Assembly: GCA_002269645.1 (NCBI GenBank)
Contig: NIVC01000480.1
Location: 1 to 64,000 of the forward strand
Origin: Macrostomum lignano
Lineage: Eukaryota
Reading direction: 5' to 3'
DNA: 64,000 bases
The stretch's first letter is position 1. Each line of letters opens with the position of its first letter. The translations under genes and the position numbers were made by a program. Positions 3,454 to 63,182 of the stretch are shown in pieces. A model generated the notes under the pieces. The model saw only the letters and a list, made by a program, of their open reading frames with translations, made no database searches and was not told the DNA's origin.

Positions 3454-6275
3454 GAGCAATCCTAGCCAGCAGGCATCTGGCGAGCAGAATGGCGCAGACA
3501 GCCAAAATTGCCACCGCGGCCGTGCAGACAATCAGACCGATGATCAGGTGCTGCTCGTCAATTCCGACATCCGACACGTCGTCAACGCCGGTGCGCCGAC
3601 CTCCTCGATTGTCGCCACCGCCACCGCCACTGCCTCCGGCAATGCCGCGATTGTCCAGCCTGGGCGGTCTGGCCGGCGCGTCAATCACGTTGACAGTCAG
3701 CCGGGCAGTTGAGCTGCGACTCTCGTTGCAGCCGGGGCAGTCGCTGGCCGACAGAGTCAGCCGGTACCGCCCGACGCTGGTCGGCTTTCGGCGCAGCTTG
3801 AGGCCACCGCCGATCGAGTCGATCGAGAACAGTCCGTGCGGATCGCCGGCCAAGATTGAGTAGCGAACCCGGCCGAAATCGCCATCGTCCGAGTCGACAG
3901 CTTTGAGCTCGATGAAGGCCCGGTCGGTCTGCTCGTGTCGGGACACGTTCACGGCGGACAGCTGGGCGGATGGCACTATCCAGTCTGGGCTGTTGTCGTT
4001 TCGGTCCAGAATGATCACCTGCAAAATCGCGATCAGATTGGTGAGGTAGAGAGTGTCACGAGATACACATGCACTCGTGAGACATTTGTCAATGTTTGTC
4101 CCTTTTGTAACATTCCTTAGTACCTGTCTTAGGGTCTGCTTACGAAATTAGAACTCACCTTGACCCTGCAGGTGCCTGTCAGCGGTGGATGGCCCCGATC
4201 CATTGCTCGCACGGTGAACATGTACGCCTTCTCGTCGGCTCTGTTGGCAAGCAGAACCGGCGCCTCTCGTCCACCTTAGCTGACGTTCGGATCTGCGCCG
4301 TCCGGCCGCCGGAGTCGAGCGAAACGATGCTAAACGGCACGGCCTGAGCCAACGGAGACTGAATCGAATAGCTAATATTGGCGTTCAGGCCCTCGTCGTC
4401 GTCGAAAGCCGTCAGGTTTCCAACCAACGTGCCGATTGGCTCGCCCTCAAACAGCTCGTAAGTAAACTGTTCAGCTGAGAACTTCGGCGCTACGTCGTTC
4501 TCGTCGATGACTCGAACGACTACTTGAGTTGTGGCATTCCGAGACGGCGAGCCGTGGTCTGTAGCGATCAGCGAGAATCTCAGCTCACTTTTCTGCTCGC
4601 GATCGAGCGAAGTCGACGTAAAAATATCGCCGCGAGAAGTTGAGCCGAGGCGAAACAGGTCCGCGTCTGGAGACGCTTGATCGATTGCGTAGGACACGCG
4701 ACCATTCCTACCTGCATCCCTGTCTGCAGCATCGATGCCACCGACTCTTGACATCGGCGGCAGGTTCTCGCGCACCCGGAACTCGTAGCGACTCTGCGCG
4801 AACGATGGCGACTCGTCGTTGACGTCCTCGATGTCGATGTCGAGCTGAACGGTGCTGGATAGAGGTGGGTTACCGCGGTCTCGACACTCGATGCTTAGCC
4901 GATACGAATCGCGCTGCTCGCGATCGAACACCTGCCGACTGACAATTTGATACGTTTTCTGATTGGGAACCTCGCGAAACAGGTTGAGCCGGAAGCGGTC
5001 GCTCTGAGCCGCTTGAACCTCGCAGCTGGCGTCTCCTGCAGCATCAGAGTCACCATCGGTGAGAACGGCGATGCCCAGCAGGCTGTTGGCTGGGGAGTTT
5101 TCCTTCAAAGTGAGCTTGCTGGTCTCGCGCATGCCGGTAGGGGGACTCATTTTATAGACGGTCAGTTGGGGTGGACAGTCGTTCACGTCGAGCACCGCGA
5201 TTGTCACCTGGGCTGTTGATGAGCGAGGCGATTGGGCTCTGTCGCGGGCCACGATGGCGAAATGGAACAGCCTCGAGTCCGCTTTTTCATAGTCCAGCGT
5301 CTGCTTCAGCGTCAGGCTGCCGCGCATCGGGTCCAATCGGAAATGCTTCAGCACGGCTGCCGGAGTGGCTTCGGCGAATATGTACTCGACCTCGCCGTTC
5401 CGACCCTTGTCGGGGTCGTCCGCTTTCAGTTGAAGAATCGGCCGGGGGTAAGGCGCGCTCTCGTTCACCGACAGGCTGTAGTGAGACTGGTTGAACACGG
5501 GAGCGTGATCGTTGACGTCCTCCACCAAGACGAAGAGTTTTATGCTTGCAGACCTCGGACTCGGTGCCGAGTCTTTGGCGACAAGGGTCAGGTTGTACTT
5601 TTCAATGATCTCCCGATCCAGAGGTTTGTCAACGCTGATGGCGATCCATTCAATGGAAGAGTCAGGATGGTAGGTCGCGATGGAGAAGGTTCCGCTGGCG
5701 TCCTTAAGCTCGTAGCTCAAGGTGCCGTTAGGTCCATAGTCCCGATCTTTGGCGGCCTCAACGCGGAACGTCTGACGGACTGGGAAGTCCTCGCTAAGGC
5801 GCGCCTCCAAAGAGTGACGCGACCAGGACGGTGCGTTGTCGTTGATGTCGAGAATCGAAATGCGGACGTCCACAGTGGCGTCAAACATCATCTGAGCCGA
5901 GCTGCTGAAGCGGAACACCTGGAAGTTTAGCACGCACTGCTCGAGCAGGTGCGGATTCGGAAGCTGGAGTCGCCGATTGCACTGCTCAAGCTGGTCCCGG
6001 TCGATGCGCTGCCGAACGCGGACCTGACCGTTCGAGTCCACGCTAAAGTAGGCATCTCCCGAGGTGCTGACCCCGTCGCCCTTGTTGGGGATGATGCCGA
6101 ATGTGGCGTTTTCAGATGCACTGTCGAGGCTGTCAAGCAGGCTGCCGACCAGAGTACCTGGCGGCTGCTCCTCAACGGTGCTGAATGACACCTGGCGTTG
6201 CATCGACCAGACCGGTTGCAGCGCCAGCAGTAGCGAGAGGGGGACCAGCCTCCAATCCAAAGGACGATGCGACAT
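3454..6275 (-). CDS. Protocadherin (7 extracellular cadherin repeats + TM); 1-bp frameshift near 4269; cytoplasmic exons not located
   Basis: Exon 6275-4159 encodes a signal peptide and cadherin motifs DINDNAP, DVNDHAP, DVNDCPP, DVNDESP, DENDVAP and LDRE/FDRE. Intron 4158-4019 is GTGAGT..GCAG. Exon 4018-3454 encodes VIILDRNDNSP, a 7th repeat and TM IIGLIVCTAAVAILAVCAILLA, ending at a GTGAGT donor (3453). Confidence 0.92.
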
Positions 6276-19857: not shown

Positions 19858-35093
<15,236 letters not shown>

Positions 35094-38200: not shown

Positions 38201-38924
38201 ACTGTGATGACCTAGAACTGTCCATGACGTCATCTATGACGACCTAAGCCATCTACATTTTCTACATTTACACTTCTTAGTTTATTTCTAACTTTCTAAA
38301 ACTACATGTTAAATCAAGTGTAATGTTGTAAACACACACATGCACACACCCCAAGAAGTCAGCCTACCCCACTAACTGAGGTTTATCAAAACCATCATGA
38401 GCACATGCACTCATGCAGCCGATTCTGAGCTAGGCCAGAGAATAGGATTGGAGTAGAGAAGAGAGAAAAGGAGAGGAGAGGAGACCCAGCATCCCAATTC
38501 CCAACTCAAGCGATTTTGATTGATGGAGAGAACTGCCAACGTTGCGCGTGCGGCGAGAACGCGTTTGAGACCATTTTATCAACAAGAATTCCTGCTTAAC
38601 AGAATTAAGCCAAGGAAAAGGAGAAGGCAGTACTCTCAGGTCCTATTGAAAACTTTGAGTCTCTCTTCTGCTTAAAAGTGAGCTCAGGTGACTTACACCA
38701 ACTTCTGAACTTCTGAAAAGCCCTTTTCGCTGACCAGCAACTATTTTTACACGTAGAAATCAAACGGTGCTACTTTCAGTAACCTGTATAATAAATGTAT
38801 TTACAGCAGCCGAGTTGCAAAATTCCCCCCCAGTTGTTTTTAAATCGCCAAATTCAAACAAAATTTTAAAGATCAATCTGAGGGATAACTGCCATCGGAG
38901 CAGATAAATTTCACTCCAAATCTG

Positions 38925-39735
38925 ATATGTGTCACTCTGAATCTGAATTGTGTCACTCTGAATCTGAATTTTGTCACTGACTCCGAAATGTGTCACTCTG
39001 AATCTGAAATGTGTCACTCTGAATCTGAATTGTGTCACTCTGAATCTGAATTTTGTCACTGACTCCGAAATGTGTCACTCTGAATCTGAAATGTGTCACT
39101 CTGAATCTGAATTGTGTCATTCTGAATCTGAATTGCGTCACTCTGAATCTGAATTGTGTCACTTTGAATCCGAAATGTGTCACTTTGAATCTGAAATGTG
39201 TCACTCTGAATCTGAAATGTGTCACTCTGAATCTGAAATGTGTCACTCTGAATCTGAAATGTGTCACTTTGAATCTGAAATGTGTCACTCTGAATCTGAA
39301 ATGTGTCACTCTGAATCTGAATTGTGTCATTCTGAATCTGAATTGCGTCACTCTGAATCTGAATTGTGTCACTTTGAATCCGAAATGTGTCACTTTGAAT
39401 CTGAATTGTGTCATTCTGAATCTGAATTGCGTCACTCTGAATCTGAATTGTGTCACTTTGAATCCGAAAAGTGTTACTCTGAATCCGAATAGTTTCACTC
39501 TAAATTTGAAGTGCGTCACTCTGAATCTGAATTTTGTCACTTTTAATCCGAAATGTGTCACTCTGAATCTAAATTGTGTCACTCTGAATCTAAATTGTGT
39601 CACTCTGAATCTAAATTGTGTCACTCTGACTCCGAATTGTGTCACTTTATATCTAAATTGTGTCACTGTAGCTGAATCTCAATTGTGTCACTCTGAATCT
39701 GAATTGTCACTCTGAATCCGAATTGTGTCACCCAA
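38925..39735. repeat. 21-bp minisatellite GTGTCACTCTGAATCTGAA(A/T)T
   Basis: About 38 units with duplicated multi-unit blocks. Confidence 0.94.
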
Positions 39736-40163
39736 AATCTTAAGTGTGTGACTTGTCAATAATTTGATTAAAAACAAATGTTTTTTTTCAAAGAGATATT
39801 TAGCAGAATAAAAATTTAACGAAAGAGGTCCTTGGTTTAACTAAATTGGACCCTTTCCTTCATGGTTGAACAAATACTTCAGTTAGAAAACGCCCGGAGT
39901 TGTGAATAAAATTGCCAAACATTAAACCGTGATTCTCATTGGCTAGAAGTTGTTTGGGCTCGAGGAGCTGGTGACCACTCAGATACAGTTAGACAAACTA
40001 TTCTCGAATTGCTAAATTAACTTTGCCCCCAAATTGTTTAAGAGAGAACATTTCAGGAAAACTTTGTAAGATTTTATATTGTAGAGAAAGCAGCAGAGAA
40101 GTTAGCAAGTTATCCTTCAGAGAGGAATCATTATAAGCTAATTTGATTATAAATAAACAAAAA

Positions 40164-43123
40164 ATGGCTCTCGAACGAGGGAAAAATCTTAGCGATGAAG
40201 TCGATCAATTAGCTGGTAAGAGAATCTTATTAAATATATGTTTGAATGGACTCACTCATGAACTCACTCATGAACTCACTCATGAACTCACTCATGAACT
40301 CACTGATGTCTCACTCATAAACTCACTCATGAACTCAATCATGAACTCACTAATGTCTCACTCATGAACTCACTCATGAACTCACTCATGAACTCACTCA
40401 TGAACTCAATCATGAACTCAATTGTAAACTTACTCATGAACTCACTCATGAACTCACTCATGAACTCACTCATAAACTCAATCATGAACTCAATCATGAA
40501 CTCAATTGTAAACTTACTCATGAACTCACTCATGAACTCACTCATGAACTCACTCATGAACTCACTCATGAACTCACTCATAAACTCACTCATGGACTCA
40601 CTCATGAACTCACTCATGAACTCACTCATGAACTCACTCATGAACTCACTCATGAACTCACTCATGAACTCACTCATGAACTCACTCATGAACTCACTCA
40701 TGAACTCACTCATGAACTCACTAATGTCTCACTCATGAACTCACTCATGAACTCACTCATGAACTCACTCATGAACTCACTCATGAACTCACTCATGAAC
40801 TCACTCATGAACTCACTCATGAACTCACTAATGTCTCACTCATGAACTCACTCATGAACTCAATCATGAACTCAATTGTAAACTTACTCATGAACTCACT
40901 CATAAACTCATTCATGAACTCACTCATAAACTCACTCATAAAGTCACTCGTGAACTAACTCACTCATTCATGAACTTTCTCATGGACTCATTCATGAACT
41001 TTCTCATGGACTCATTCATGAACTTTCTCATGGACTCATTCATGAACTTGCTCATGGACTTATCCATGAACTCATTCATGAACTCACACATAAACTCACT
41101 CATAAACTCACTCATAAACTCACTCCGTCCTTGCCCTTCACTATTCTTCATATGCCACTGTAAAAAACATTAATTTAATAAACAATCTTCTTATCAATTT
41201 TTACAAGCAAGCGCTGGGCACCTGTAAACAGTTCAAATATTTGATACTGAGTTGTCAAAACGAATTAGCTAAATGCTGTCCTATTACGACGTATTAGAAA
41301 TGAACACCAGCGGTCCCCCACAATGACTCATGACGCAAAAATTCCGCTGTATACAATTTTCGTCCGTATTACACTCCTGTGCTCACTATACTGTCCAGTT
41401 TTTTATTGCTTCAAGATTAAAAACAGAAACATTTTTCGAGTATTAGTCAGACAGATAGCGCGAGAGTTGGGGGCGGTAGCCGTAGCTGAAGGATACGGGA
41501 GAAGGATGTAGTAAAATTAAACTTGCTAAAGTTAAAAAAAATTCCATAATAAAATTTCTGCAGATAAACATCCAAAAGCGCTCCCGACTCCACCGCCACT
41601 GATCTCGTCGACTGACATGCAGCTGTTGTCAACCTACCTGAGATTTTGGCAGCAGTATTTACCTCTGATGATTTCCAATGCGCAGATGCCCCAGCTTCAT
41701 CAGTTGATGCAGCCAGAATTGCGGCAGCATCAGTGGCATCAACAGCCTTCAAAACGATTTGATTTTAGTCGGCTGGCTCAGTCTTGCAGCGAGTCTGTAA
41801 AAAGCGTCGATACGTCTTGCTCATCGTCTTCAACATCGTCATCAGCTCAGCTGCCGCGGCCGCAACATCCGTTGTTGGACACCGGTTTGGTTAAAAAACC
41901 TCGCGGAAGGTAAATTGAGTCTGGGAAATCTGGGATCAAGTGGGAAAGGTTTGGAAGATCAAGTAAGAGGTGAACTGTGAATATGCTGAGGACCTAAATG
42001 GAAGCAAACCACCCTGGAAGATTTGGAGGTCATCCAATGACTTTTGAAGAATCTGAGGTCATCCAATGACTTCCGAAGAACTGGAGGTCATCCAATGACT
42101 TCCGAAGAACCAGAGATCATCCAATGAGTTCTGAAGAATCTGGGGTCATCCAATGAGTTCTGAAGAATCTGGGGTCATCCAATGAGTTCTGAAGAATCGG
42201 TGGTCATCCAATGACTTCTGAAGAATTGGAGATCATCCAATGACTTCTGAGGAGCCGGAGGTCATTCGTTGACTTCTGAAGAATCGGTGGTCATCCAATG
42301 ACTTCTGAGGAGCCGGAGGTCATCCAATGAGTTCTGAAGAACCGGAGATCATCCAATGACTTCTAAAGAATTGGAGATCATCCAATGACTTCTGAGGAGC
42401 CGGAGGTCATTCGTTGACTTCTGAAGAATCGGTGGTCATCCAATGACTTCTGAGGAGCCGGAGGTCATCCAATGAGTTCTGAAGAACCGGAGATCATCCA
42501 ATGACTTCTAAAGAATTGGAGATCATCCAATGACTTCTGAGGAGCCGGAGGTCATCCAATGAGTTCTGAAGAACCGGAGATCATCCAATGGCCTCTAAAG
42601 AAACGGAGATCATCCATTGACTTCTGATGTATCGGAGATCATCCAATGAGTTCTGAAGATTTAGAAGTCATTCACTGATTTCTGATGGGCACTAATGTAG
42701 GGTTTTGTGCTGACTTCTGTGGAATCGTAGCCTAGTGGTTGGTTTGCATCTTTAAACTTGGCAGTTAACAATTGCTACTAACACCAAACCCAAAACCAAT
42801 GATCAAACCTGATAAATGCGTCAATTCCCATTCCCAGAAGCCGCAAAGAATACGTGTGCCGTCACTGCAGCCGCCGGTTCACGAAGTCCTACAACCAGCT
42901 CATCCACGAGCGCACTCACACAGACGAACGGCCATTTCCTTGCGACGTGTGCGGCAAAGCGTTCCGTCGTCGCGACCATCTGCGCGATCACAGCTACGTG
43001 CACAGCAAGAACAAACCGTACGTTTGTCCCGTCTGCGGCAAAGGCTTCTGCCAGTCGAGGACGCAGAAGGTGCACACAGCGGTCTGTTGCGCTGCGGCGG
43101 GGGCGTCGTTATCTAGTGGGTGA
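40164..43123 (+). CDS. odd: odd-skipped family C2H2 zinc-finger transcription factor (~227 aa)
   Basis: Exon 42838-43123 encodes [74 protein letters not shown], the diagnostic odd/Osr finger array. Exon 41564-41909 contains the RFDFSRLA motif and joins in phase 2. First exon 40164-40215 is phase-compatible but tentative. The symbol denotes the family, not a specific paralogue. Confidence 0.9.
40250..41125. repeat. Inverted copy of the 12-bp family (ACTCATGAACTC)n
   Basis: Reverse complement of the 35475-36200 unit; lies in the putative odd intron 1. Confidence 0.95.
42025..42660. repeat. 29-bp minisatellite GGTCATCCAATGA(C/G)TTCTGAAGAA(T/C)CGGA
   Basis: Lies in odd intron 41910-42837. Confidence 0.9.
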
Positions 43124-45002: not shown

Positions 45003-45698
45003 TTGTGGCAACTGTAAATATTCTAAACCAGGGCAGGTGGCAGCGCTATATTAGGTAGCAGGCAATGGAGGCCACTAAATTACCTACTGCGTACTACTTT
45101 AGAATGGAGATGCAATCACAATTCTGATTTCATTCACGGTCAGTCTGATGGTCGAATATAGCCAAAACGTTGCTAAAAAGAGAATTTTAACCACACTAAG
45201 GTTAGCAACAGCAGACGGCGGTGTAAGTTGCTGTATTGAATTAAATAGACGATCGAATGCTGCGATAATATTAGCACTTATTTGCAACCGAAATTGAAGC
45301 TATTTAGATCGAGGTTACATGTCAATAAATTACAGAAATTATTTAATGCTTGTATTCGGTTTATGGACATTAAGTATACAATTGCAGTTTGCGCCAGGCC
45401 AACTTTGAGTTAAGTTAAGAACCTTTTTAGAGCGATGTCCGCGTTGCCGATACTATTTTAAGCTACTTGATAATTTGAATAGCCATTAAAATGCTGTTTA
45501 CGGCTACAAATGTATTTAGATGCTAAATTAATGTATTTAACAAAAAGATGAAAAGCAAACCCTTAATCCTTTTCAGGTCGATTTAGTTTACTGCCAGAAA
45601 GTCGAGCCTTGGAACTGCGTGACTGATTTTTGTAACTAAAACAACGTAGCTATTCAAGAGAACAGTGAATTAAATTTACTTTTGGATATAAGTGCATC

Positions 45699-46687
45699 CA
45701 GGGGCGTCGCCATGGATTTTATGGTGGGGGTCGAAAAGCCAACGAATCTCTTAATGTACAGGGCTAAATTCCTACATGTACATTATTTTGAGAATCGGTG
45801 TTGTTAGCGCTCATTTTAGCGCCGCAGGCACTCATTTTGGCGCCGCAGGCACTCATTTTGGCGCCGCAGGCAGACACTCATTTTGGCGCCGCAGGCACTC
45901 ATTTTGGCGCCGCAGGCACTCATTTTGGCGCCGCAGGCACTCATTTTGGCGCCGCAGGCACTCATTTTGGCGCCGCAGACACTAATTTTGGCGCCGCAGG
46001 CAGACACTAATTTTGGCGCCGCAGGCAGGCACTCATTTTGGCGCTGCAGGCACTCATTTTGGCGCTGCAGGCACTCATTTTGGCGCCGCAGGCAGACACT
46101 CATTTTGGCGCCGCAGGCACTCATTTTGGCGCCGCAGGCACTCATTTTGGCGCCGCAGGCACTCATTTTGGCGCCGCAGACACTAATTTTGGCGCCGCAG
46201 GCACTCATTTTGGCGCCGCAGACACTAATTTTGGCGCCGCAGGCACTCATTTTGGCGCCGCAGACACTAATTTTGGCGCCGCAGGCACTCATTTTGGCGC
46301 CGCAGACACTAATTTTGGCGCCGCAGGCAGACACTAATTTTGGCGCCGCAGGCAGGCACTCATTTTGGCGCTGCAGGCACTCATTTTGGCGCCGCAGGCA
46401 GGCACTCATTTTGGCGCCACAGGCAGGCACTCATTTTGGCGCCGCAGGCACTCATTTTAGCGCCGCAGGCAGGCACTCATTTCGGCGCCGCAGGCAGGCA
46501 CTCATTTTGGCGCCGCAGGCAGACACTCATTTCGGCACCGCAGGCACTCATTTTGGCGCCTTGAAGCAATACTAACTATTGATTCCCACAAAGTGGGGGT
46601 GGGGGGACAGAGCATTGGCATGCCCCCCATAGCTTTTACTGAGGGGGGGGGACGGACATGCCCCCCCCCCAGTGGCGACGCCCCACG
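45699..46687. mobile_element. hAT-type MITE carrying an expanded 21-bp satellite (CACTCATTTTGGCGCCGCAGG)
   Basis: Terminal inverted repeats GGGGCGTCGCCA (45701) and TGGCGACGCCCC (ending 46684); degenerate 8-bp TSD agtgcatc/attgcata; internal array 45812-46560. Confidence 0.75.
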
Positions 46688-47092
46688 ATTGCATATCATT
46701 TAGACAGTATATGCGGAGTTGCAGTCAACAAAATTTCAAAATAGAATCATCTCTGTTTGTTTTAATAACCGCCGTTGAAAAAAGCTTATTGTTGATTTGT
46801 TTTAAGTCAGTATAACACTTATCGTACTGCTTAATTTATTCTTCCTGCATGTCTAGGTCGCTTTTTTTATAAGCGATTAAATAAGTCGTGCCAAACTTTT
46901 ATTTATATACTTGTATATTCTTTGAAACATTAATTAGGCCAATAAAGTCGTTGATTTTGTGCTGGTGTAAATCAATTGATTTCATTGATCCAGCCGGTAT
47001 TATCTTGCTGTATACTGCAAACTGAAAAGAATTAATTACTATACTGACAGTATATAATCAAATTAGCTATTTTATATACTTTTATACCGGTT

Positions 47093-47400
47093 GGGGGTAG
47101 TAGCCTAGTTGGTTAAGAGCCTTGTCGGATTCACGACTCGAAGGTCGGGGGTTCGATCCCCGACCCCATTCGGATCGGAACAATTTGTGTCCTTGAGCAA
47201 GACACACTTAACTCTGCATTGCTTCAGTTCACCCAGCTGTAAAATGGGTGCCAGCATTAGCTGGGGTAATTGAGGATGTGTGGCGACCCCCAGCAGTCCT
47301 TGGACTGAACAGCCGTACGCAGCCTTCAGATGCGCTGCGCAATAGCTGCGGCTGAGCTGTCGGTTGCACATCTGGCCCAAAGGTGTAATCAATTATTGTT
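47093..47400 (+). mobile_element. tRNA-derived CORE-like SINE
   Basis: Pol III A box TAGCCTAGTTGG and B box GGTTCGATCCC, then TGTGTCCTTGAGCAAGACACTTAAC..CTGTAAAATGGG resembling the MIR/CORE domain, and an AT-rich tail. Confidence 0.85.
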
Positions 47401-48169
47401 ATTTTTACTATTATTTTATAGCTACTATATAAATGCAGTCTATAAAAAAGCAAATAGACTGCATTAGCTAAAGCCTATAAAACATTGCTTGGACACACAC
47501 ACACACAGAAGCTACTGTTGTGTTGAGCTGTCCTCAATAATAGTTGCCATGCATGAAGCCTATCATGAAGTAGCTAGTTCCTTATCAGCCGTGCAATTCT
47601 GCGGGTCCCCAACTGCACCATTTTGTTCTGTAGCTGCAGTATGAACTGGTCTTTATCGCCACCAAGGCCCAGTAATACATAAATATAATGCTTAAAAAAG
47701 CAACTGTCTGCGAAGCAACAAGAGCACAGAACGATCTGAATTTTGCCAGTTTGCCTATCTTTGACTGACAGCTCGAGCTGGAGATATGATCAGACTGCAT
47801 GCAGTGTCGCGCGAAACGTGCACAAATGCGTAAACTCTCTTTCGATTCGTCGTCTGGAGCTGCTGTTTTTTTTTTTGGTTTCGTGCTGGTTTGCTATAAA
47901 ACTACTGTATTTTAACTAAACAGCTCCTGGAGGGAAAAAGCAACAATTTTCTTAAGTTCAAATTGCCGGCCATAGCTATACATGTATACGCATTTGGTAA
48001 AGATGAAGAATAGTTCCTGGAACTGACAACGAAACGGGACAGAATTTCAAGAAAGTTTGGCATGAAAGTCAGCAAGAAAAGAGCAAGACAATTTAGCTAA
48101 TTGTCCCAGGGAATGATGAAGACAAAGTCAGGCTAGGGATTGTGATTGATGTAGCTGTACCAGGGAGCG

Positions 48170-49425
48170 TGTTTAGAATTGCCACCTCGATCAACTGTCG
48201 CACTCTTAAATCTGCTTGGAGGAGAATGCTGGCGCAGCTGGCATCGGATCTGCAGCTGGACATTGTAATGCTAGAGGTGTCAGTTCTGACGCAAGACGGC
48301 TTCTAACGTGAGGATCTCGGCGCCGGCTGGATCCTGTTTTTCACCTCTGCGGATATTCGAGGAGGTGGAGCAGTCGGCGCTCTAGCCGGACCACGGTTGC
48401 AGCGGAGTGTCTGGTGTGTCGCTGTGTCACCTCGGCTGCTGTGTGTGGATGTGAGGCTGCAAGGCCGTAACGGTCTGCTTTTCTGCGCGTACAGTATGCA
48501 CCGACAGCTGCCCATCAGCTCGAGGCACAGGAGTTCTTTCATTTCCTGTCGGAGCAGCTCGAGTCAGTCGCAATGCGTGACAACCTGGTGGTGCTTGGCG
48601 ATCTCAGTGCTGTCGCGGAGAGATCCCAGCGCTCTATCTTTGTGTCCCCGCGCCAGAATGGCAACTCAATACTGCGCTTACTCGATACTCCCGATACGTC
48701 GCGGCATGATCTGGTGTCGGCCAATACGCGTTTTCGCAAGCCAGCTTTTAGATTGTCAACCTTTGCCAGCTGTAAGCGAAGGAAGCGGAACGCACGTTGA
48801 AACGCCACGATTTGCCGGGCCAAGCTCGACCACATTCTATTTCTCTACCGCGAAATCAGACGGGTGACAGTCTGCGACACGATGGCCCCGCTGTCCATCC
48901 AATCCGGACCACTGCCTGCTTTTCTGCAACCTTCGCACCCGGGACACGCTCTACAGGCCGCCCAAGCGACCCCCACGCCGCTACTACAGGGCTCTGCGAG
49001 ACTCCAGCACCCGCGGCTGGTTCACCTGTCTTCGCCGCCGAGTCCGCGAGCACTGGCAACTATTCCGAAATAAGCGCGGCAGTCGCGACGGCAGCTAGCA
49101 AGACGCTGCCTCTGATAAAACCTGCAGCCCGTAGTCTCCCGGTCTGGGCGAATGACAAGGAGGTTCAGGAGGCGAGGTGAACAGTCGAGAGGCTGCTACG
49201 GACCAGGCGACCGTCGGCCAAGGCCGAGAAACCCTGGCGGACGCCTGCACCAAACGGCAGCAAGCCGCTGTTGACGATGCCATTCGAAGCGTCACCTCTG
49301 CGGGGCTCGACCAACGGAATCGGCACGTCTGGCCCACAATCAACGCCCTGACTGGCCGCACAAAGAAGACGGCACTGAACCTGACCAGCGATACACCAGT
49401 GGCGCGCAGAAACTCTCGGGTTCAT
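48170..49425 (+). mobile_element. Degenerate LINE (non-LTR retrotransposon) fragment: APE endonuclease plus linker, no RT
   Basis: Interrupted frames give RIATSINCRTL, LDIVML, GGGAVG, SPRLL, LLFCAYS, LVVLGDLSA and ANTRF, in APE motif order; stops and frameshifts are present. Confidence 0.75.
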
Positions 49426-50492
49426 TTTGATTTGTACACTAGGGAAGAAATAAAATATTACCGTCAATGAGGCCTCTTCAACACTCTATCTAGCTGTCTA
49501 AAAAGTTGTAATCTTGATGGATCTATGTTATTTAAACACTCTTAGATTATGTTAGCAGATTTTTCGTGATGCCAATTGGGTACCAAGACGTTTTCATTTT
49601 GATGTGACGTTCATCAAAGTAAATTTATTGTTTAAAACAACAATTTAAACTTCAATTTTAATAAATAATGGAAGAAGTTAGTGAATTGACCAGATGCACT
49701 GAATTTGTAAAAAATGTATTTTTATGTTAAAGAAAGTTAGTTTTAATTTATGATGATACATTTCCAAATTGTTCATATACGAGAAAAATGATACGAGCGT
49801 ACAATCGCGTTGCAAAATGACTACCCATAATAACGTGTAATATCATGTGGTTACACATCCACGTAAATACATAATTGCTTACAGTACATTCTGCATGAGA
49901 TCCTGTGTTTATTAATTGTCTTTTCGTTTCCTGAAGTCCTGCAATGTTTTGAAGTGAAATGTTTCAGTGGAACCCGAGTCATCAAGCGAAAACCTGAGCA
50001 AATAATATCAGATTATAAACACGTACCTGTTTAACTTCAGCAGGGAAGTCGTCAATGCGATCTTCAAAACACCTGAGGCAGAAACGTCGAACATAAAAAA
50101 TGGAGCAACCCTGAATGTAGATGAAATGAGAATTTCATACATTATATGCATAAATAGTACATAAATAATCATAAAAGCAGTCAATAGCAACATTGAGAAC
50201 TTTTATTGCACAATGATTGGTATATTTATTATGCCTTACACTTTGCATGCAAACGCTTCTATTACAAACAGAGCAGTTTGCACCGACCATGATACAGCTG
50301 CTACCTTCAGAAGTTTCAGGATCCTTGAGAAGATAGCAATCCTCCAGAAGTCTAAAATAAAATTGAGTACTTTGATTAAACGCTATAACATTTTAAGTTT
50401 AAAGGATATAATTCCGCAAATATTTTTCTGGTTTCTGCTAAAAACACCACAAATTATTCTTGTTAGTTCTACTAATAGTAGCAATATGCTAC

Positions 50493-50629
50493 CAGTGGCG
50501 CAGCCAGGAATTTTTTTCGCTGGGGGGGCATGATCAGCACCTGGAGGAGGGGTGTAATGAGAGGGGTTTCTTCGGAATTTCGGGGGGGGGGTTGTCTCCC
50601 GCGGGTCCACTGACTGCGCCACGCCACTG
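50493..50629. mobile_element. Short hAT-type MITE
   Basis: TIRs CAGTGGCGCAG(C)CAG and CTGACTGCGCCAC..CTG; flanks tatgctac and catgctac (right copy offset by a 6-bp microduplication). Confidence 0.65.
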
Positions 50630-50879
50630 CATCTGCATGCTACGAGTCTGACTTTAAAATGAATCGTAATGTTACTAAGACAAAGTAAATTTACCAACTA
50701 TCATCTCAGCTATGTTATTATGTGATACATGTAGAAGAAATAGATGTACCTGCATATACTTCGATGGAGTACCAAGTAGATATGAGGAAACAAAATCTGT
50801 GGCTAGGCATGTAAAATCCCCATTCGATGATACATAGAAGTCAAACTTAACTGCATGAAAACAGCTCCAAGCAATTGAT

Positions 50880-51311
50880 CATAGGCGTAGGAACGTTTCA
50901 AAAAGTGGGGTGGGGGCAGGTTCAGTGGGGGATTTAGGGGGGGGCGCACAGGGTGCACGCCCCCGTCGAGTTAGATTTTTTTAGATGGAAAATGCACATT
51001 ATCATGTACCGATTATTTTCAGAATCCGTCTTGTCGATCAGCACTCATTTTATAAAGCGCCGCAGGCACTCATTTTAGTGCCGCAGACCCACATTTTAGC
51101 GCTGCAGGCACTCATCTTGGCGCTACAGGCACTCATTTTGGCGCTGCAGGCGCTATGTTTTGTCGCCCTGCAGCAAAATGCATTCATGCAAAGTAGCAAG
51201 GAGTCTACATTATACATTTAATATGTGGGGGGTCAGATACCATTACTGCCCCCCCCCATTTTAAAAAGTGAGGGGGCATGGCCCCACTGGCCCCCCTTTC
51301 CGACGCCTATG
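50880..51311. mobile_element. hAT-type MITE with about 5 copies of the same 21-bp unit as 45699-46687
   Basis: TIRs CATAGGCGTAGGAA and TTCCGACGCCTATG; TSD caattgat/caatcgat (7/8 identical); internal GCACTCATTTTGGCGCTGCAGG units at about 51040-51150. Confidence 0.8.
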
Positions 51312-52555
51312 CAATCGATTAGCAAGGCTAACGGTTAAAAAAGAACCATTCACCAAAGAGACCCAAATTTTACACAATGCGATAAAAAAAATGTCCATCC
51401 ATGCCATGGGGAATATATTGTACAGTTTTGTTTTTGCTTCTAGTTGTATGTGCGGATATATTAGGCTAAAACAAAGTGCTGCTAAATAATGCTGTCATAA
51501 AGTCATTCAATTCGATTCATTCAGTTCAGATAGAGCATACTATAACTAAATGTGGTAGCACTTACTCCATTGATGCCTTTAAAAATCTAGCCTGCTTTCC
51601 AAATGATGAATATGGAAATTCGAGATCGCAAGAACAACATGTAAAATCAGGCATATCTCATATAATTTACGCTCGCGCTGTCTTTAGATAAATTTTAATT
51701 TAAATCTTAATCAGGTAAATTTGTTTATCAATCAAAATAGACTTTACAATTATTATTAATAGTATTATAGAATTTTAATATATTAATTAGTATTAATTGT
51801 GAATACTAACTCGATGCTAACTCAATTTAAAATAATGCAACAAAGTCAATCAAACGTCTTTAGAGCTAACTATCAATATATAATTTACACCAAGTTAATT
51901 TATTTTGGTTTTGGTAAAAATTGAAATTAGTCGGCCTTTTTTACTTGTGCAAAATAACTGTATTGGAATAAACAAAGTAACTTGATTTTAACTTGGTTTA
52001 GAAGGACATTACCATTCTTTTTGCTTTATTAGACTACAACTCAGTATTATTTTAAAATATATTGTAAGTAAACAAATAGTTAGTTGTCATTGCTAGAAAG
52101 AGGATAGAAATTGTCTGATGGAAGATGGACGAGCCCGATCCCAGTCGAGACATCATGACGACTGACGAGTCGGTCGACAATCGTGGTGGTAATTAGGGAC
52201 TACCATGTATATTAAAATAATAATCAATCCAGGCCTACCGGCCTGCTTCTCGCAACCACATTTCAAAAATATTAAGTGAAACTTTCTACCAATTTTCAAA
52301 ATCAGACTGACTGTTAGAGTCAGTTAGAGTTAGACTTACTTAGGCTTGCCTTAGGCCTACTCATAGCATAGCATAGCATCAGGTATTGAATATTGGGCAT
52401 ACTTGATCTTTGAAGCATTTTTATTAGTAAATAATAACCTTCAAAACATTGTATTTTATTTGGAAACTGAAAATAGGCCTACCTCATTAGGGCCTAATAG
52501 GAATAAAAATATATGCCTAAAAGTCAGTGGTGTAGACCATGACCACCACACACAA

Positions 52556-53136
52556 ACCTTTTAAACTTTGTCCAACTCATAATAATCCAAGTTCCAACCA
52601 TTATTCCAACTCATAATGTGGTTACAAGTCAGAATAACGGTTGGAATATTCCGAGTAGGCCTATGTAAAGATTTAATTTAATAATTTAATTTAATTTAAT
52701 TTATAATTTAATATGTTGTAAGAGTCTAAATATCATTATGAATCTTATTCCAACTGATTATTAAATATATTGCAATGATTAAATGATACTTATAGTCAAT
52801 TATAATTGCAGTATAGCCTAGGCTATAAAATGAATAAATAATTAGTCAAAATAAGAGTCAGAATGATATTTTGACTCTAGCAATATATTTAACAATCAGC
52901 AAGAATTAAGAGTTGGAATAATATTCAGACTCTTGCAATGTATTAAATAATCAGTCAAAATAAAAGCCAGAATGATGTTTAGACTCTAATTGCAATATAT
53001 TAAATAATTAGTTGGAATTAGGCCTAAGAGTCATAATATTCCAACCATTATTCCCCTTATTCTGACTCATAATTTAACCATATCACAAGTTAAAATAATG
53101 GTTGGAATATTCCAAGTTGGACAAAGTTTAAAAGGT
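52556..53136. mobile_element. Foldback/palindromic non-autonomous element
   Basis: Perfect 22-bp inverted repeats ACCTTTTAAACTTTGTCCAACT and AGTTGGACAAAGTTTAAAAGGT, inverted internal sub-repeats, and a central palindrome TATAGCCTAGGCTATA. No clean TSD. Confidence 0.7.
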
Positions 53137-56240: not shown

Positions 56241-56312
56241 CAAACATTTCTGATTCAACAAATACCAGTGCAATAGCTTAAAAACAAGACAACAGTGTTC
56301 AAAAAGTTAAGC

Positions 56313-58832
56313 ATGGCTCAATACTCCGACACAAACTTAATTGTCAACTATCTACCCCAAGACATGACGGACGAACAATTAAGACAGATATTCGATAGCG
56401 AAGTACCCGGAGTTAAATCTGTAAAAATCTGTCGCAACAACGCCACAGGCTATAGCTACGGTTACGGATTTTGCGAATACGACACTCAAGAGCTGGCTAA
56501 CCAGGCCATTGCGGCTGTCAATCGCCGACAAGTTGGCAATAAAACGCTTAAAGTGGCATTTGCTCGATTGCGCAGCGATCAAACTAGAAATTGTAAGCTG
56601 CGCTTATCGAATCTGCCGTCTTGGCTGACTCAGGAAGCGCTGCAATCCGTGCTGGATCAATACGGATCGGTTATTAATTGCAAAGCGCTGCTAGATCCCA
56701 ATGGAGCTTGTCGGGGTGTGGGATTCTGTCTGTACGAGACCAGGTCGTCTGCCGAGCAGGCTATGAATTCGATGAATGGGAAACCCTGGCCTAACTCGGA
56801 CTCTTTGCCAATACAGGTGACACTAGTTCAATATTTATTAATAGCCGTTTTTTTTCTGCGAAACATAGAAAATATGATTCTGGTTGCTCTTTTAAATATG
56901 CATCTTTCCATTAGGGAGAGGTCTATTTCTGAGTTTTTCTGTCCTTCCCTATCTGTATTGTCTGTTTTTCCCTGTCTGTCTTGTCTGTTTTTCCCTGTCT
57001 GTCTTGTCTGTTTTTCCCTGTCTGTCTTGTCTGTCCTTCCCTGTCTGTCTTGTCTATCCTTCCCTGTCTGTCTTGTCTGTCCTTCCCTGTCTGTCTTGTC
57101 TATCCTTCCCTGTCTGTCTTGTCTGTTTTTCCCTGTCTGTCTTGCCTGTCCTTCCCTGTCTGTCTTTTCTGTCCTTCCCTGTCTGTCTTGTCTGTCTTTC
57201 CGTCTGTATTGTCTGTCCTTCCCTGTCTGTCTTGTCTGTCCTTCCCTGTCTGTCTTGTCTGTCCTTCCCTGTCTGTATTGTCTGTCCTTCCCTGTCTGTC
57301 TTGCCTGTCCTTCTCTGTCTGTCTTGTCTGTCCTTCCCTGTCTGTCTTGTCTATCCCTCCCTGTCTGGCTTGTCTATCCTTCCCTGTCTGTATTGTCTAT
57401 CCTTCCCTGTCTGTATTGTCTATCCTTCCCTGTCTGTATTGTCTATTTTCCCTGTCTGTCTTGTCTATCCTTCCCTGTCTGTCTTGTCTGTTTTCCCTGT
57501 CTGTATTGTCTGTTTTTCCCTGTCTGTCTTGTCTGTTTTTCCCTGTCTGTCTTGTCTGTCCTTCCCTGTCTGTCTTGTCTATCCTTCCCTGTCTGTCTTG
57601 TCTGTCCTTCCCTGTCTGTCTTGTCTATCCCTCCCTGTCTGGCTTGTCTATCCTTCCCTGTCTGTATTGTCTATCCTTCCCTGTCTGTCTTGTCTGTTTT
57701 CCCTGTCTGTCTTGCCTGTCCTTCTCTGTCTGTCTTGTCTGTCCTTCCCTGTCTGTCTTGTCTGTTTTCCCTGTCTGTCTTGCCTGTCCTTCTCTGTCTG
57801 TCTTGTCTGTCCTTCCCTGTCTGTCTTGTCTGTTTTCCCTGTCTGTCCTTCCCTGTCTGTCTTGTCTGTCCTTCCCTGTCTGTCTTGTCTGTTTTTCCCT
57901 GTCTGTCTTGCCTGTCCTTCCCTGTCTGTCTTTTCTGTCCTTCCCTGTCTGTCTTGTCTGTCTTTCCGTCTGTATTGTCTGTCCTTCCCTGTCTGTCTTG
58001 TCTGTCCTTCCCTGTCTGTCTTGTCTGTCCTTCCCTGTCTGTATTGTCTGTCCTTCCCTGTCTGTCCTGTCTGTTTTTCCCTGTCTGTCTTGCCTGTCCT
58101 TCCCTGTCTGTCTTGTCTGTCCTTCCCTGTCTGTCTTGTCTATCCTTTCGTCTGTCTTGTCTGTTTTTCCCTGTCTGTCTTGTCTGTCCTTCCCTGTCTG
58201 TCTTGTCTGTCCTTCCCTGTCTGTCTTGTCTATCCTTTCGTCTGTCTTGTCTGTTTTTCCCTGTCTGTCTTGTCTATCCTTTCGTCTGTCTTGTCTGTCT
58301 TTCCCTGACTGTCTTGCCTCTCCTTCCCTGTCTGTATTGTCTGTCTCGCCTCTTCTTCGTCTTCCTTTCCTGGCCTGTCATATTTCCTTGTGATTATCCT
58401 GCTGTCTGTTCTAGATAGTCCTAGACTGTTCTATTAGCTTTCCCTATCTGTACTCTGCCGCCAGGCCTTCAATATGTGTAATAATTCACACACATCTAAT
58501 TATCTCCCCAGGTTCGCTACGCCGATCAGAACGAGAAGAAGGTGCGGGCGCCACAAGCCGGGCACTACCAGCACCAGCACCAGCACCAGCCTCAGCACCA
58601 GCCGCCGCCTCCGCCGCAGATGCACCAGCAATCAATGAATTTTTATCATCATCCCGCAGCTTCTTATCATCGGCAGCCCCAGCCTTACGGTCACCACCCT
58701 CAGTATGTTCAGCAGCAGCCGCCGATGCCGCCTCAGCAGCAGCCTCATCATCATAATCAGCATTTCCATGGCGGGTTTCAGCATCCCGGCCACCAAGGAG
58801 CCTGGGGCTATAGTCAGCCTCGTTATTCATGA
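56313..58832 (+). CDS. Sex-lethal/ELAV-family RNA-binding protein: 2 RRMs + His/Gln/Pro/Tyr-rich tail (~274 aa)
   Basis: Exon 56313-56816 encodes TNLIVNYLPQDMTD, TGYSYGYGFCEY, LKVAFAR, LSNLP and RGVGFCLY. Intron 56817-58511 is GTGACA..CCCCAG. Exon 58512-58832 completes RRM2 (PIQ|VRYAD) and encodes the low-complexity tail. A possible upstream exon 52125-52188 is phase-compatible but weak. Confidence 0.88.
56935..58345. repeat. ~23-bp pyrimidine-rich minisatellite TTCCCTGTCTGTCTTGTCTGT(CC/TT)
   Basis: Fills the RRM gene intron. Confidence 0.94.
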
Positions 58833-61839: not shown

Positions 61840-63182
61840 TCACTTGCTGTTGCCATTAACCGTTACGGGGAAGTTGCTGAGATCCACGAGACGCATCGTC
61901 TGGTCTTCGAGTATTTCAACTCGGCCAGCGAAAAAATATTCCACTAGCAATTGCATCACTGAATAGCACAACTGGTACTCAATCTGCAATGTGTGTTGAA
62001 ATGCAAATCAGATTTGAAGTTGCTCATTATAGTCTTTGCTTCGGTTTTGTAGACTATTTTAGCGCCACATGGGGCTTTTTAGCGCCACTGAGACATACTT
62101 GGCGCCATTTTAGCGCCGCTGAGACAATTTTGGCGCCATTTAAGAATGCAACATATTCGCGCTTCTCCACCTGTAGTTTATTATTATTAGAGGCAGGGGG
62201 GTTGTGTGCACCCTGGCGCACTTTAAGCGACATAGGCACACAACCGGCGAGAGGCATTACTGCCCATTCCGCCGACTCCCCTGAGCAGGCATACAAGCGC
62301 GGATACGTACGCAGGCACACACTCACACAGGAGTGTACAGCGGCCCTAACTTTATATTATCTTTAGGCATGTACACTTCACTGCGCCTTGGGGGCTTGGC
62401 TCTCAAGGCCGTTAATTGCACGAGCAGAGCCAAGCCGAGATTCCAATTCAGCCCCAAATTAATGTGGCTGCACTTGGAATCGAGCCTGGGTCGCTGGCAC
62501 ACCAGAGCAGCTGCGCTACCGCTGGGCTACGGCCCCCCTTCAACCTGTAGTACCTGCATACAGAATGCATCTTGCTTTGCTAAGCGCTCACCAAGCTGTC
62601 AATCAACTGCGGCCGGTTTCTGCGCACTTTCTCCACAGCCCTGAAGATGTCAATCTCGCCTTCGTACCGCATCTTGTCCATTGACATGTGCAGCACGCAG
62701 AAGACGCCGCAACGAGACACTCCGTTGCTTAAAAAATGGGAATGAGCTTTCCGTTGTAAAAAAGTACTAAAAAACTCAACGTCCCTATGCTACTAATAAG
62801 TAGTGAAAGGGTAGTTTTAAAAAAACTATTTGGAGTACGAGATTTTCTCCCAGCGCGTCTTTCCATTCAGACACTGCAGAGAGTTCTTTATTGCGTTTAT
62901 CAAAAAACCGATTAAAAAATGTCTACTTTTCTACTATAATAAGTAGCAATATTAGGCCATGGCTTACTCGCTGACAACCAGAATCGGGCTGACGCTTGAC
63001 AGGCGACAATTTGCCAGCTCGGCGATGCAGGCGATCTCAAGTAAGCCGTGGTTGGCTGATGGCGATCTGTGGCCTCGCTGCCAGCAGCTCTTCAAGTACA
63101 GCAGCAGCAGCGGCCGCGCCTGACGGTGACTCTCCGCGATGTCGGTTGCGGCGGCTGCGGTAGACACCCTTGATGAGGTCGT
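61840..63182 (-). CDS. 3' end of receptor-type protein tyrosine phosphatase (catalytically dead D2-like domain); gene continues beyond the window
   Basis: Exons 63182-62968, 62727-62592 and 61983-61840 join in phase: ..CWQRG..SPILVVS|DNGVSRCGVFCVLHMSMDKMRYEGEIDIFRAVEKVRRNRPQLIDSL|IEYQLCYSVM..stop. Confidence 0.85.
62178..62538 (-). mobile_element. tRNA-derived SINE (second family) in the last PTP intron
   Basis: The minus strand begins GGGGGGCCGTAGCCCAGCGGTAGCG (A box), has GGCTCGATTCC (B box) and ends in (TAA)n. Confidence 0.75.

What the first reader, a model, noticed from the sequence alone, without database searches (positions are those of the whole stretch)
45699..51311. MITEs acting as satellite seeds: one 21-bp unit at ~5 copies in one hAT MITE and ~33 copies in another
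Seen: two elements with short TIRs and 8-bp TSDs (45699-46687 and 50880-51311) share an internal leader (ATTATTTTnAGAATC), G/C-tract right arms and the unit CACTCATTTTGGCGCCGCAGG, but differ in array length and in TIR sequence. Established: 8-bp TSDs with CA-initial TIRs typify hAT elements, whose subterminal short repeats are transposase-binding sites. Inference: this is a snapshot of a mobile cassette that disperses a seed which then expands in place, a candidate engine for this genome's intronic minisatellites.
Basis: partly seen in the sequence, partly recalled or inferred. Interest (0 to 1): 0.72.

Follow-up and report, generated by a model that had tools for sequence, protein, structure and literature searches.

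The report
Flatworm transposon carrying an expandable minisatellite
Two small non-coding transposons in a Macrostomum lignano (flatworm) window carry the same 21-bp repeat, which has grown in place to very different lengths; this is a known kind of element and does not explain the genome's many other minisatellites.

Summary
The window is Macrostomum lignano. E1 (45699-46687) and E2 (50880-51311) have terminal inverted repeats and imperfect 8-bp target-site duplications (6/8 and 7/8). They share a leader, the unit CACTCATTTTGGCGCCGCAGG and a trailer, with 33.7 versus 4.6 copies. A third copy (E4) sits at an unrelated locus in two related contigs, with about 51 and 49 units.

The ends of E1, E2 and E4 align with those of array-less MITEs. 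One of these, E6, has a perfect 8-bp duplication, and its empty site is preserved in a duplicate locus. That shows mobility with an 8-bp duplication, which fits hAT.

Unit variants private to E1 or to E4 are amplified as higher-order blocks, so the arrays grew in place.

The wider claim fails. None of roughly 50 other arrays examined shows comparable ends, and their flanks are unique. All 11 arrays in the 16 kb shared by three locus copies keep their positions and change only in copy number. E1 and E2 appear intergenic, not intronic.

Verdict: a new member of a known kind, the tandem-repeat-containing MITE. The hAT assignment is likely but unproven, because no transposase was found. No empty site could be tested for E1 or E2.

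The parts
45699..46687 (+). E1: tandem-repeat-containing MITE, 989 bp, of which 758 bp is array
   Evidence: Inverted repeats, duplication, leader, array and trailer. The arms are homologous to E4 in L001 (z = 8 for the left arm, z = 28 for the right).
45691..45698 (.). E1 left target-site duplication, AGTGCATC
   Evidence: Matches 46688-46695 (ATTGCATA) at 6/8, with E1's ends set by homology to E2's ends.
45699..45712 (+). E1 left inverted repeat, CAGGGGCGTCGCCA
45782..45803 (+). E1 leader, ATTATTTTGAGAATCGGTGTTG
   Evidence: 19/22 identical to E2 51012-51033. Also present in E4.
45808..46565 (+). E1 array: 34 units of 21 nt, about 10 of which carry a 4-nt CAGA/CAGG insert
   Evidence: Higher-order blocks EAAA(A)B..HIC x2 and BF x3 are built from E1-private variants.
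46566..46672 (+). E1 trailer and right arm, with G-run / C-run hairpin pairs
   Evidence: (pair I3).
46673..46687 (-). E1 right inverted repeat, TGGCGACGCCCCACG
46688..46695 (.). E1 right target-site duplication, ATTGCATA
50880..51311 (+). E2: member of the same family, 432 bp, diverged subfamily. Left arm not detectably related to E1; TIR variant CATAGGCGT.
50872..50879 (.). E2 left target-site duplication, CAATTGAT
   Evidence: 7/8 match to 51312-51319 (CAATCGAT).
51012..51033 (+). E2 leader
51041..51151 (+). E2 array: about 4.6-5 diverged units (81% matches)
51152..51185 (+). E2 trailer, GCGCTATGTTTTGTCGCCCTGCAGCAAAATGC
   Evidence: Homologous to the E4 trailer (score 35, z = 18) and partly to E1's.
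51312..51319 (.). E2 right target-site duplication, CAATCGAT
50493..50635 (+). E3: array-less MITE (143 bp) with the same terminal consensus (CAGTGGCGCAGCCAGGAATTTTTTT..GGGGGGG). Probable duplication TATGCTAC / CATGCTAC.
   Evidence: The right tip carries small tandem duplications, so the boundary is uncertain by 6 nt.
61996..62163 (+). Relic of the leader plus a short array (TTTTAGCGCC-type units), without recognisable ends
   Evidence: Local alignment to E2 scores 25, against 12.3 +/- 1.8 (maximum 20) for shuffles. The right-arm match is not significant.
25913..26497 (-). 32-mer minisatellite that shares the 10-mer TTTTGGCGCC with the family unit. No arms. Its relationship to the family is uncertain.

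Best explanation
E1 and E2 are two old copies of a non-autonomous DNA transposon family (MITEs) of Macrostomum lignano. A third copy, E4, was found elsewhere in the genome. The family's ends have the consensus CAGGGGCGTmGCCA, usually followed by a T-run and then G-runs, and are shared with array-less MITEs.

Shown here:
- A relative with these ends inserted with an 8-bp target-site duplication.
- The composite of arms, leader, array and trailer occurs at three or more unrelated sites.
- Each array contains private unit variants amplified as blocks.

Inferred:
- The ends are mobilised in trans by one transposase, most likely of the hAT superfamily.
- The progenitor already carried a few 21-bp units. 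Variants A, B and C are shared by E1 and E4, and B-like and C-like units occur in E2.
- After insertion each array changed length independently, by slippage or unequal exchange.

This genome turns short direct repeats into kilobase minisatellites almost everywhere, so the MITE is a carrier and substrate of that process, not its cause. As the arms decay, arrays with the TTTTGGCGCC core may persist as naked minisatellites. This last step is a weak inference.
For: Organism: a cadherin ORF in the window is 99% identical to a M. lignano protein.

Anatomy of E1 and E2.

Third copy: E4 is at L001:44764-46067 and L004:26669-27930, with the same left end, leader, array, trailer and right arm.

Array lengths: 34, about 5, about 51 and about 49 units.

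Unit maps: E1-private variants (CACTAATTTT and the +4-nt units) and E4-private variants (TTTTAGCGCC and the JKL block) are amplified as higher-order blocks. Variants A, B and C are shared.

Ends: all nine ends of E1, E2, E3, E4 and E6 align.

Mobility: E6 (L003:14922-15188) has a perfect duplication AAGCAGGT, and the duplicate locus L002 holds the empty site with a single AAGCAGGT.

Genome-wide expansion independent of MITEs: 41% of the window and 54% of L001 is tandem array. Eleven of 11 arrays are positionally conserved in three copies, with copy numbers differing up to about 4-fold. One 33-mer array has 423 copies in L001 and 36 in L004.
Against: - No empty site was obtained for any array-bearing copy. 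E4 is filled in both contigs.
- E1's duplication is only 6/8, and its ends are offset by 1 nt.
- E4's right end is degenerate. Its 7/8 duplication requires that the last 12 nt or so are missing.
- E2's left arm has no detectable similarity to E1 or E4 (z = 1), and its end starts CATAG rather than YARNG.
- No transposase gene was found in about 190 kb.
- The four target sites do not fit the hAT target preferences nTnnnnAn or nnnTAnnn (recalled from memory).
- The sample holds only three array-bearing insertions.
- Array lengths come from assemblies and could be mis-sized.
Confidence: 0.8

Rival explanations
1. One reading: this MITE family, or MITEs in general, is the main source of the genome's minisatellites. 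It disperses seeds that later expand.
For: Three or four arrays with the TTTTGGCGCC core lie outside recognisable MITEs and could be decayed copies. The family density is about 1 per 50 kb in the DNA sampled.
Against: - None of the other arrays scanned in the window and in L001-L003 has convincing ends and a duplication.
- The two weak candidates do not recur at the sister array.
- Array flanks are unique.
- Units of the other arrays are unrelated to the 21-mer.
- Arrays sit at conserved positions in three locus copies.
- Flanks of the naked core-sharing arrays show no similarity to the family arms.
Confidence: 0.06
2. The leader-array-trailer is a separate cassette that has moved between different MITE backbones, or between MITEs and free arrays, by recombination or template switching. 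On this view E1/E4 and E2 are chimeras rather than subfamilies of one lineage.
For: Leader and trailer are well conserved in all three elements (z = 13-22 and z = 6-18; these segments include an array unit, which inflates the scores). The left arm of E2 is unrelated to that of E1/E4 (z = 1), and the ends differ at 4 of 14 positions. Core-sharing arrays exist without arms. The bivalve TR-MITE literature proposes a similar 'cassette' idea (PMC3879986).
Against: The E2 ends still fit the family consensus. The right arms of E1 and E2 retain similarity (z = 9, although run-rich sequence inflates this). Ordinary divergence of old subfamilies explains the same data. There are only three copies.
Confidence: 0.12
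3. The elements belong to another superfamily that makes 8-bp duplications (P, or an unclassified group), not hAT.
For: E2 starts CATAG. None of the four duplications fits the hAT target consensus (recalled from memory). No hAT transposase was found nearby.
Against: Four of the five elements start CAGGG or CAGTG, which fits the hAT end motif YARNG. The duplication is exactly 8 bp where it is perfect. The inverted repeats are 14-16 bp, typical of hAT.
Confidence: 0.18
4. The similarity reflects segmental duplication or chance rather than transposition, and the inverted repeats and duplications are fortuitous.
For: E1's duplication is imperfect. In a mismatched-flank null, inverted repeats of score 12 or more arise in 2.8% of flank pairs.
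Against: Similarity between E1, E2 and E4 stops at the ends, and the flanks are unrelated. GGCGWCGCC occurs only at E1's two ends. The null rate for an inverted repeat plus a duplication of 7/8 or better is 0 in 1406 pairs. A relative with the same ends has a clean empty site.
Confidence: 0.02

Closest known systems
Tandem-repeat-containing MITEs of bivalves (DTC84 in Donax trunculus; pearl / CvA in oysters), PMC3879986
   Same: A central array of a variable number of repeats is flanked by left and right sequences with short inverted repeats. Every copy differs in repeat number. The flanks act as a 'cassette' for the internal repeats. These elements have been proposed to link transposition to the spread of tandem repeats.
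   Different: The flatworm family has a 21-bp unit, up to about 50 copies, no microsatellite module, an 8-bp duplication and CAGGGGCGT ends. There is no sequence relationship. The resemblance is an analogy, not family membership.
Xenopus MITE-borne repeats (Xmix/Xstir; miDNA4), as summarised in PMC9659126
   Same: A satellite monomer is born inside a MITE, is amplified in tandem, and shows lineage-specific array growth on a mobile carrier.
   Different: In the review's table the miDNA4 carrier is a Tc1/mariner-type MITE and Xstir derives from inverted-repeat sequence. Here the array is internal, the carrier is hAT-like, and no large satellite blocks were seen.
hAT superfamily MITEs (for example Mar in Drosophila, cited in PMC9659126; Ac/Ds-type elements, from memory)
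   Same: An 8-bp target-site duplication, inverted repeats of 14-16 bp beginning CAGGG or CAGTG, non-coding, a few hundred bp long, and an insertion polymorphism with an intact empty site (E6).
   Different: No autonomous partner or transposase was identified. The target sites do not fit the Ac or Buster consensus. E2's end begins CATAG. An internal minisatellite is not a usual hAT MITE feature.
Helitron / Helentron and DINE-TR1 carriers of tandem repeats (PMC7492417; PMC9659126)
   Same: Non-autonomous mobile elements that scatter short satellite-like arrays through euchromatin.
   Different: Those carriers lack inverted repeats and target-site duplications. The elements here have both, so the mechanism is cut-and-paste rather than rolling-circle.

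Membership tests
MITE (non-autonomous class II TIR element) | Terminal inverted repeats | tested here: met
   E2 13/14. E1 has a 12-nt perfect core. E6 15/16. All nine ends align.
MITE (non-autonomous class II TIR element) | Target-site duplication of fixed length flanking the ends | tested here: met
   8 bp in each case: E6 8/8, E2 7/8, E1 6/8, E3 7/8 (boundary uncertain), E4 7/8 (right end degenerate).
MITE (non-autonomous class II TIR element) | Small and non-coding | tested here: met
   Lengths are 143-432 bp without the array. E1 is 989 bp, of which 758 bp is array. The only ORFs are translations of the repeat.
MITE (non-autonomous class II TIR element) | Multiple dispersed copies with unrelated flanks | tested here: met
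   Three array-bearing and two array-less copies, plus one relic, in about 190 kb.
MITE (non-autonomous class II TIR element) | Insertion polymorphism with an empty site | tested here: inconclusive
   Met for the terminal relative E6 (L003 filled, L002 empty). Not obtainable for E1 or E2. E4 is filled in both contigs.
hAT superfamily | 8-bp target-site duplication | tested here: met
hAT superfamily | Ends beginning YARNG (recalled from memory) | tested here: inconclusive
   CAGGG in E1, E4 and E6 and CAGTG in E3 fit. CATAG in E2 does not. E1's right tip reads CGTGG.
hAT superfamily | Target preference nTnnnnAn (Ac group) or nnnTAnnn (Buster group), recalled from memory | tested here: not met
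   AAGCAGGT, CAATTGAT, AGTGCATC and TATGCTAC: none fits fully. Four sites are too few to exclude hAT.
hAT superfamily | Autonomous partner with matching ends that encodes a hAT transposase | not testable with these tools
   No transposase domains were found in the ORFs of the window or of L001-L004. Only LINE and LTR-element domains and host genes appeared. The genome itself could not be searched.
Tandem-repeat-containing MITEs (pearl / DTC84 type) | Central array of variable copy number between arms that bear inverted repeats | tested here: met
Tandem-repeat-containing MITEs (pearl / DTC84 type) | AA duplication, adjoining microsatellite module, and sequence relation to pearl | tested here: not met
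   The duplication here is 8 bp, there is no microsatellite module, and the sequence is unrelated (PMC3879986 abstract). The class is the same by architecture only.
Helitron / Helentron carriers of tandem repeats | No inverted repeats or duplications; 5'-TC and 3'-CTRR ends with a 3' hairpin; insertion between A and T (recalled from memory) | tested here: not met
   Inverted repeats and 8-bp duplications are present. E2 is flanked by ..TTGAT|CATAGG and CCTATG|CAATC.

The most novel reading that the evidence does not exclude
The leader-21-mer-trailer unit is a semi-independent cassette that hops between MITE backbones. After the arms decay it survives as a self-renewing minisatellite. A whole sub-class of M. 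lignano minisatellites, those with the TTT(T)GGCGC(C) core, would then descend from one hAT-like carrier. The core happens to match the E2F-site consensus, so the descendants could form dispersed arrays of a regulatory motif.
Probability: 0.1. Interest if true: 0.55.

Novelty: new member of a known kind. Interest (0 to 1): 0.3.

Why it matters
The family gives a concrete, well-bounded example in a flatworm model organism of a transposon that carries a minisatellite. It comes with direct evidence for an 8-bp target duplication in the family (an empty site) and for array growth in place (private higher-order blocks).

This is useful for annotating the repeat-rich M. lignano genome. The family is a candidate hAT-type MITE that appears undescribed in the held literature. 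It is also a natural system for timing minisatellite growth against the decay of datable flanks.

The family does not explain why about 40-50% of this gene-rich region is minisatellite. That question stays open, and it is the more interesting one.

Tried and rejected
1. Reaching the homeologous sites of E1 and E2.
- The window's cadherin ORF is not on record.
- The two near-identical M. lignano Osr proteins are in UniRef only and have no contig.

2. A metagenome scan for the 21-mer found 0 hits.

3. Two further arrays gave weak inverted repeats with 6/8 duplications (38878-40120 and 40228-41180). The second is AT-rich, and its inverted-repeat motif is absent from the sister array with the same 12-mer. 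The first candidate's motif occurs only at chance frequency in the window. Neither resembles the family. I treated both as chance or unproven.

4. Is the 21-mer derived from, or similar to, the inverted repeat (GGCGTCGC against GGCGCCGC, 7/8)? About 0.16 such matches are expected by chance (own estimate), so this is not significant and was dropped.

5. A shared 'core' across all minisatellites is borderline only. CACTC occurs in 9 of 33 consensus units, against a null 95th percentile of 8.

6. Flanks of the core-sharing naked arrays show no similarity to the family arms.

7. A Pfam scan of long ORFs in the window and loci found no transposase.

8. Rfam and ARAGORN scans of the window found nothing.

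9. The PMC id tried from memory for the 2015 M. lignano genome paper is not held in the library.

Full report
**What the window is.** A 698-aa cadherin ORF (4179-6275, minus strand) is 99% identical to Macrostomum lignano protein BOX15_Mlig009452g1. The window is therefore from this free-living flatworm. The window also carries:
- LRR and PLC exons, and an Osr-like zinc-finger gene that ends at 43123;
- a two-RRM exon at 56295-56852;
- a tyrosine-phosphatase exon at 62583-62789.

TRF finds 49 arrays that cover 41% of the window. The published Mlig_3_7 genome paper reports simple and tandem repeats at 15% of the assembly (PMC5730564), so this region is an extreme case of a known property.

**Check of the observation.**
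- E1 is 45699-46687. Its inverted repeats are CAGGGGCGTCGCCA and, reverse-complemented, CGTGGGGCGTCGCCA.
- The 9-mer GGCGWCGCC occurs only at these two ends in the 64 kb, against 0.10 expected.
- E2 is 50880-51311. Its inverted repeats are CATAGGCGTAGGAA and, reverse-complemented, CATAGGCGTCGGAA. Its flanking duplication is CAATTGAT / CAATCGAT (7/8, P = 0.0004).
- With E1's ends fixed by homology to E2's, its duplication is AGTGCATC / ATTGCATA (6/8, P = 0.004).
- Both elements have, in the same order and orientation, the leader ATTATTTTsAGAATCsGTsTTG, the unit CACTCATTTTGGCGCCGCAGG (33.7 and 4.6 copies), a trailer, and arms rich in G-run / C-run hairpins.

In a scan of 39 arrays, only E2 reached an inverted-repeat score of 10 or more together with a duplication of 7/8 or better. 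The mismatched-flank null gave 0 of 1406.

**More copies.** I fetched related contigs through the cadherin protein and its cluster mate.
- L001 is NIVC01000124.1 and L004 is NIVC01000481.1. Both match window 1-16.9 kb at about 96-98% identity, in reverse orientation.
- Both carry a third insertion, E4, at an unrelated site: L001 44764-46067 and L004 26669-27930.
- E4 has the left end CAGGGGTGTCGCCATG, the leader, the 21-mer array, the trailer, and a right arm homologous to E1's.
- Its array has about 51 units in L001 and about 49 in L004.
- E4's right tip is degenerate.
- E1 and E4 arms are only about 70-77% identical, so these are old copies.

E2 shares the leader and trailer. Its right arm also scores above shuffles against E1's (z = 9), but its left arm shows no similarity to E1 or E4 (z = 1). 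It is therefore either a diverged subfamily or a chimera.

**Evidence for mobility and the 8-bp duplication.** A search of all fetched DNA with the E1 end found E6 at L003:14922-15188. E6 is 267 bp long, with inverted repeats CAGGGGCGTAGCGAGG and, reverse-complemented, CAGGGGCGTAGCCAGG. It is flanked by a perfect AAGCAGGT on both sides.

L002 is the duplicate of this locus (98-99.7% identical). It lacks exactly these 267 bp and has a single AAGCAGGT.

The nine ends of E1, E2, E3 (an array-less MITE at 50493-50635), E4 and E6 align to the consensus CAGGGGCGTAGCCAnGG, and several are followed by a T-run and then G-runs. The array-bearing elements therefore share ends with a family that demonstrably inserts with an 8-bp duplication.

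This fits hAT: an 8-bp duplication, ends of CAGGG or CAGTG, and inverted repeats of 14-16 nt. However, no transposase was found in about 190 kb, and the four target sites do not fit the usual hAT preferences (recalled from memory). I rate hAT as likely rather than shown.

**Evidence for growth in place.** I split the arrays into units.
- E1 reads MAEAAAABHICCEAAABFBFBFBHICNOAPQERS.
- E4 reads ABCACAABCACAXDDYDDZaGbDBAAcJKLJKLdGGAe.
- Units A (the consensus), B (..GCAGA) and C (..GGCGCTGCAGG) occur in both. B-like and C-like units also occur in E2, so a multi-unit array probably predates the copies.
- E1-private variants are CACTAATTTT and units with a 4-nt CAGA/CAGG insert. E4-private variants are TTTTAGCGCC and the JKL triplet.
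- These private variants are repeated as blocks (BF x3, EAAA..HIC x2, ABCACA x2, JKL x2). That is the signature of local duplication after the lineages separated.
- E4 differs by two units between contigs that are 97% identical.

**Why the 'engine' claim fails.**
- None of the other arrays scanned in the window and in L001-L003 has convincing ends and a duplication. Even E1 and E4 fail the strict gap-free criterion.
- Two weak candidates did not hold up.
- After masking the arrays, the window has no dispersed repeats in array flanks. Yet four other units recur at two or three places, some inverted. Arrays therefore spread locally without recognisable MITE arms.
- In the 16 kb shared by the window, L001 and L004, all 11 arrays sit at the same positions and differ only in copy number, for example 37 / 16.9 / 17.9 and 12 / 48 / 14.
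- One intronic 33-mer has 423 near-identical copies in L001 and 36 in L004.
- Array expansion is thus a general property of this genome, and the MITE's internal repeat is one more substrate for it.
- E1 and E2 lie in a 13-kb stretch with no coding signal, together with E3 and a foldback element. They are not in a demonstrable intron.

**Arrays related to the unit but without arms.**
- L001 46512-47710 holds 58 units that begin CTCTCATTTTGGCGCCATCG, which shares a 14-nt core with the family unit.
- L001 47748-47898 holds GATTTTAGCGCC..-type units.
- The window's 32-mer array at 25913-26497 contains GGCGCCAAAA.
- A relic of the leader plus a short array lies at 61996-62163.

The flanks of the first three show no similarity to the family arms, and the relic's right flank has no significant match to E2's right arm. 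They may be decayed copies or escaped cassettes.

**Comparison with known systems.** MITEs with internal tandem repeats that seed satellite-like arrays are well described:
- DTC84, pearl and CvA in bivalves (PMC3879986);
- Xstir and miDNA4 in Xenopus, lepidopteran microsatellite MITEs, and DINE-TR1 (review PMC9659126);
- Helentron carriers in oyster (PMC7492417).

The flatworm family matches that architecture. It differs in unit size (21 bp), copy number (up to about 50), ends and duplication length, and it is unrelated in sequence. I found no description of it in the held literature. It is a new member of a known kind.

**Limits.**
- Only about 190 kb of the genome could be read.
- No empty site was obtained for an array-bearing copy.
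- Array sizes rest on assemblies.
- The superfamily assignment lacks a transposase.

Noticed in passing
L003:14922-15188 versus L002:14190-14197: A 267-bp MITE (E6) with a perfect 8-bp duplication, AAGCAGGT, is present in one duplicate locus and cleanly absent from the other. This indicates a recent insertion by the same terminal family.
   Followed up: yes
window 1-64000; L001 1-52161: Tandem arrays make up 41% of the window and 54% of L001, about one array per 1.3 kb, each with a different unit, in introns and between genes. All 11 arrays in the 16 kb shared by three locus copies keep their positions but differ up to about 4-fold in copy number.
   Followed up: partly
L001:16972-30954 versus L004:16952-18183: The same intronic 33-mer minisatellite has 423 copies (99% matches) in one contig and 36 copies (87% matches) in the other. 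This is either a very recent, massive local expansion or an assembly artefact.
   Followed up: no
L001:35230-41132: A 5.9-kb insertion that is absent from L004. It holds a 1017-aa ORF with endonuclease, reverse-transcriptase and RNase H domains, so it is a LINE inside the cadherin gene of one copy only.
   Followed up: partly
window 6698/10463/11374; 22133/29929; 35474/40246; 55363/58971: Four minisatellite units recur at two or three nearby places, some in inverted orientation, with unique flanks and no shared arms. This points to local dispersal of arrays by an unknown route that does not involve MITEs.
   Followed up: partly
window 52556-53136: A foldback-like element of 581 bp, with a 35-nt terminal inverted repeat (89% complementary) and nested inverted subrepeats.
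   Followed up: partly
window 45810-46560 and the other core-sharing arrays: The unit contains TTTGGCGC, which matches the E2F-site consensus TTTSSCGC (recalled from memory). E1 would then present about 30 such sites in tandem. No functional evidence exists.
   Followed up: no
window, 33 array consensus units: CACTC / TCACTC occurs in 9 / 6 of the 33 minisatellite consensus units, just above the 95th percentile of shuffles. CTCATGA is shared by 4 arrays. This is a weak hint of related array families or a common core.
   Followed up: partly
window 62380-62545 (minus strand): By eye this stretch looks like a tRNA-derived SINE head, with box A-like and box B-like motifs. ARAGORN and the Rfam gathering-threshold scan report nothing.
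   Followed up: partly
window 48300-49470: A GC-rich stretch with long overlapping ORFs on both strands. One ORF reads like the linker of a LINE ORF2 by eye, but there are no Pfam hits.
   Followed up: partly
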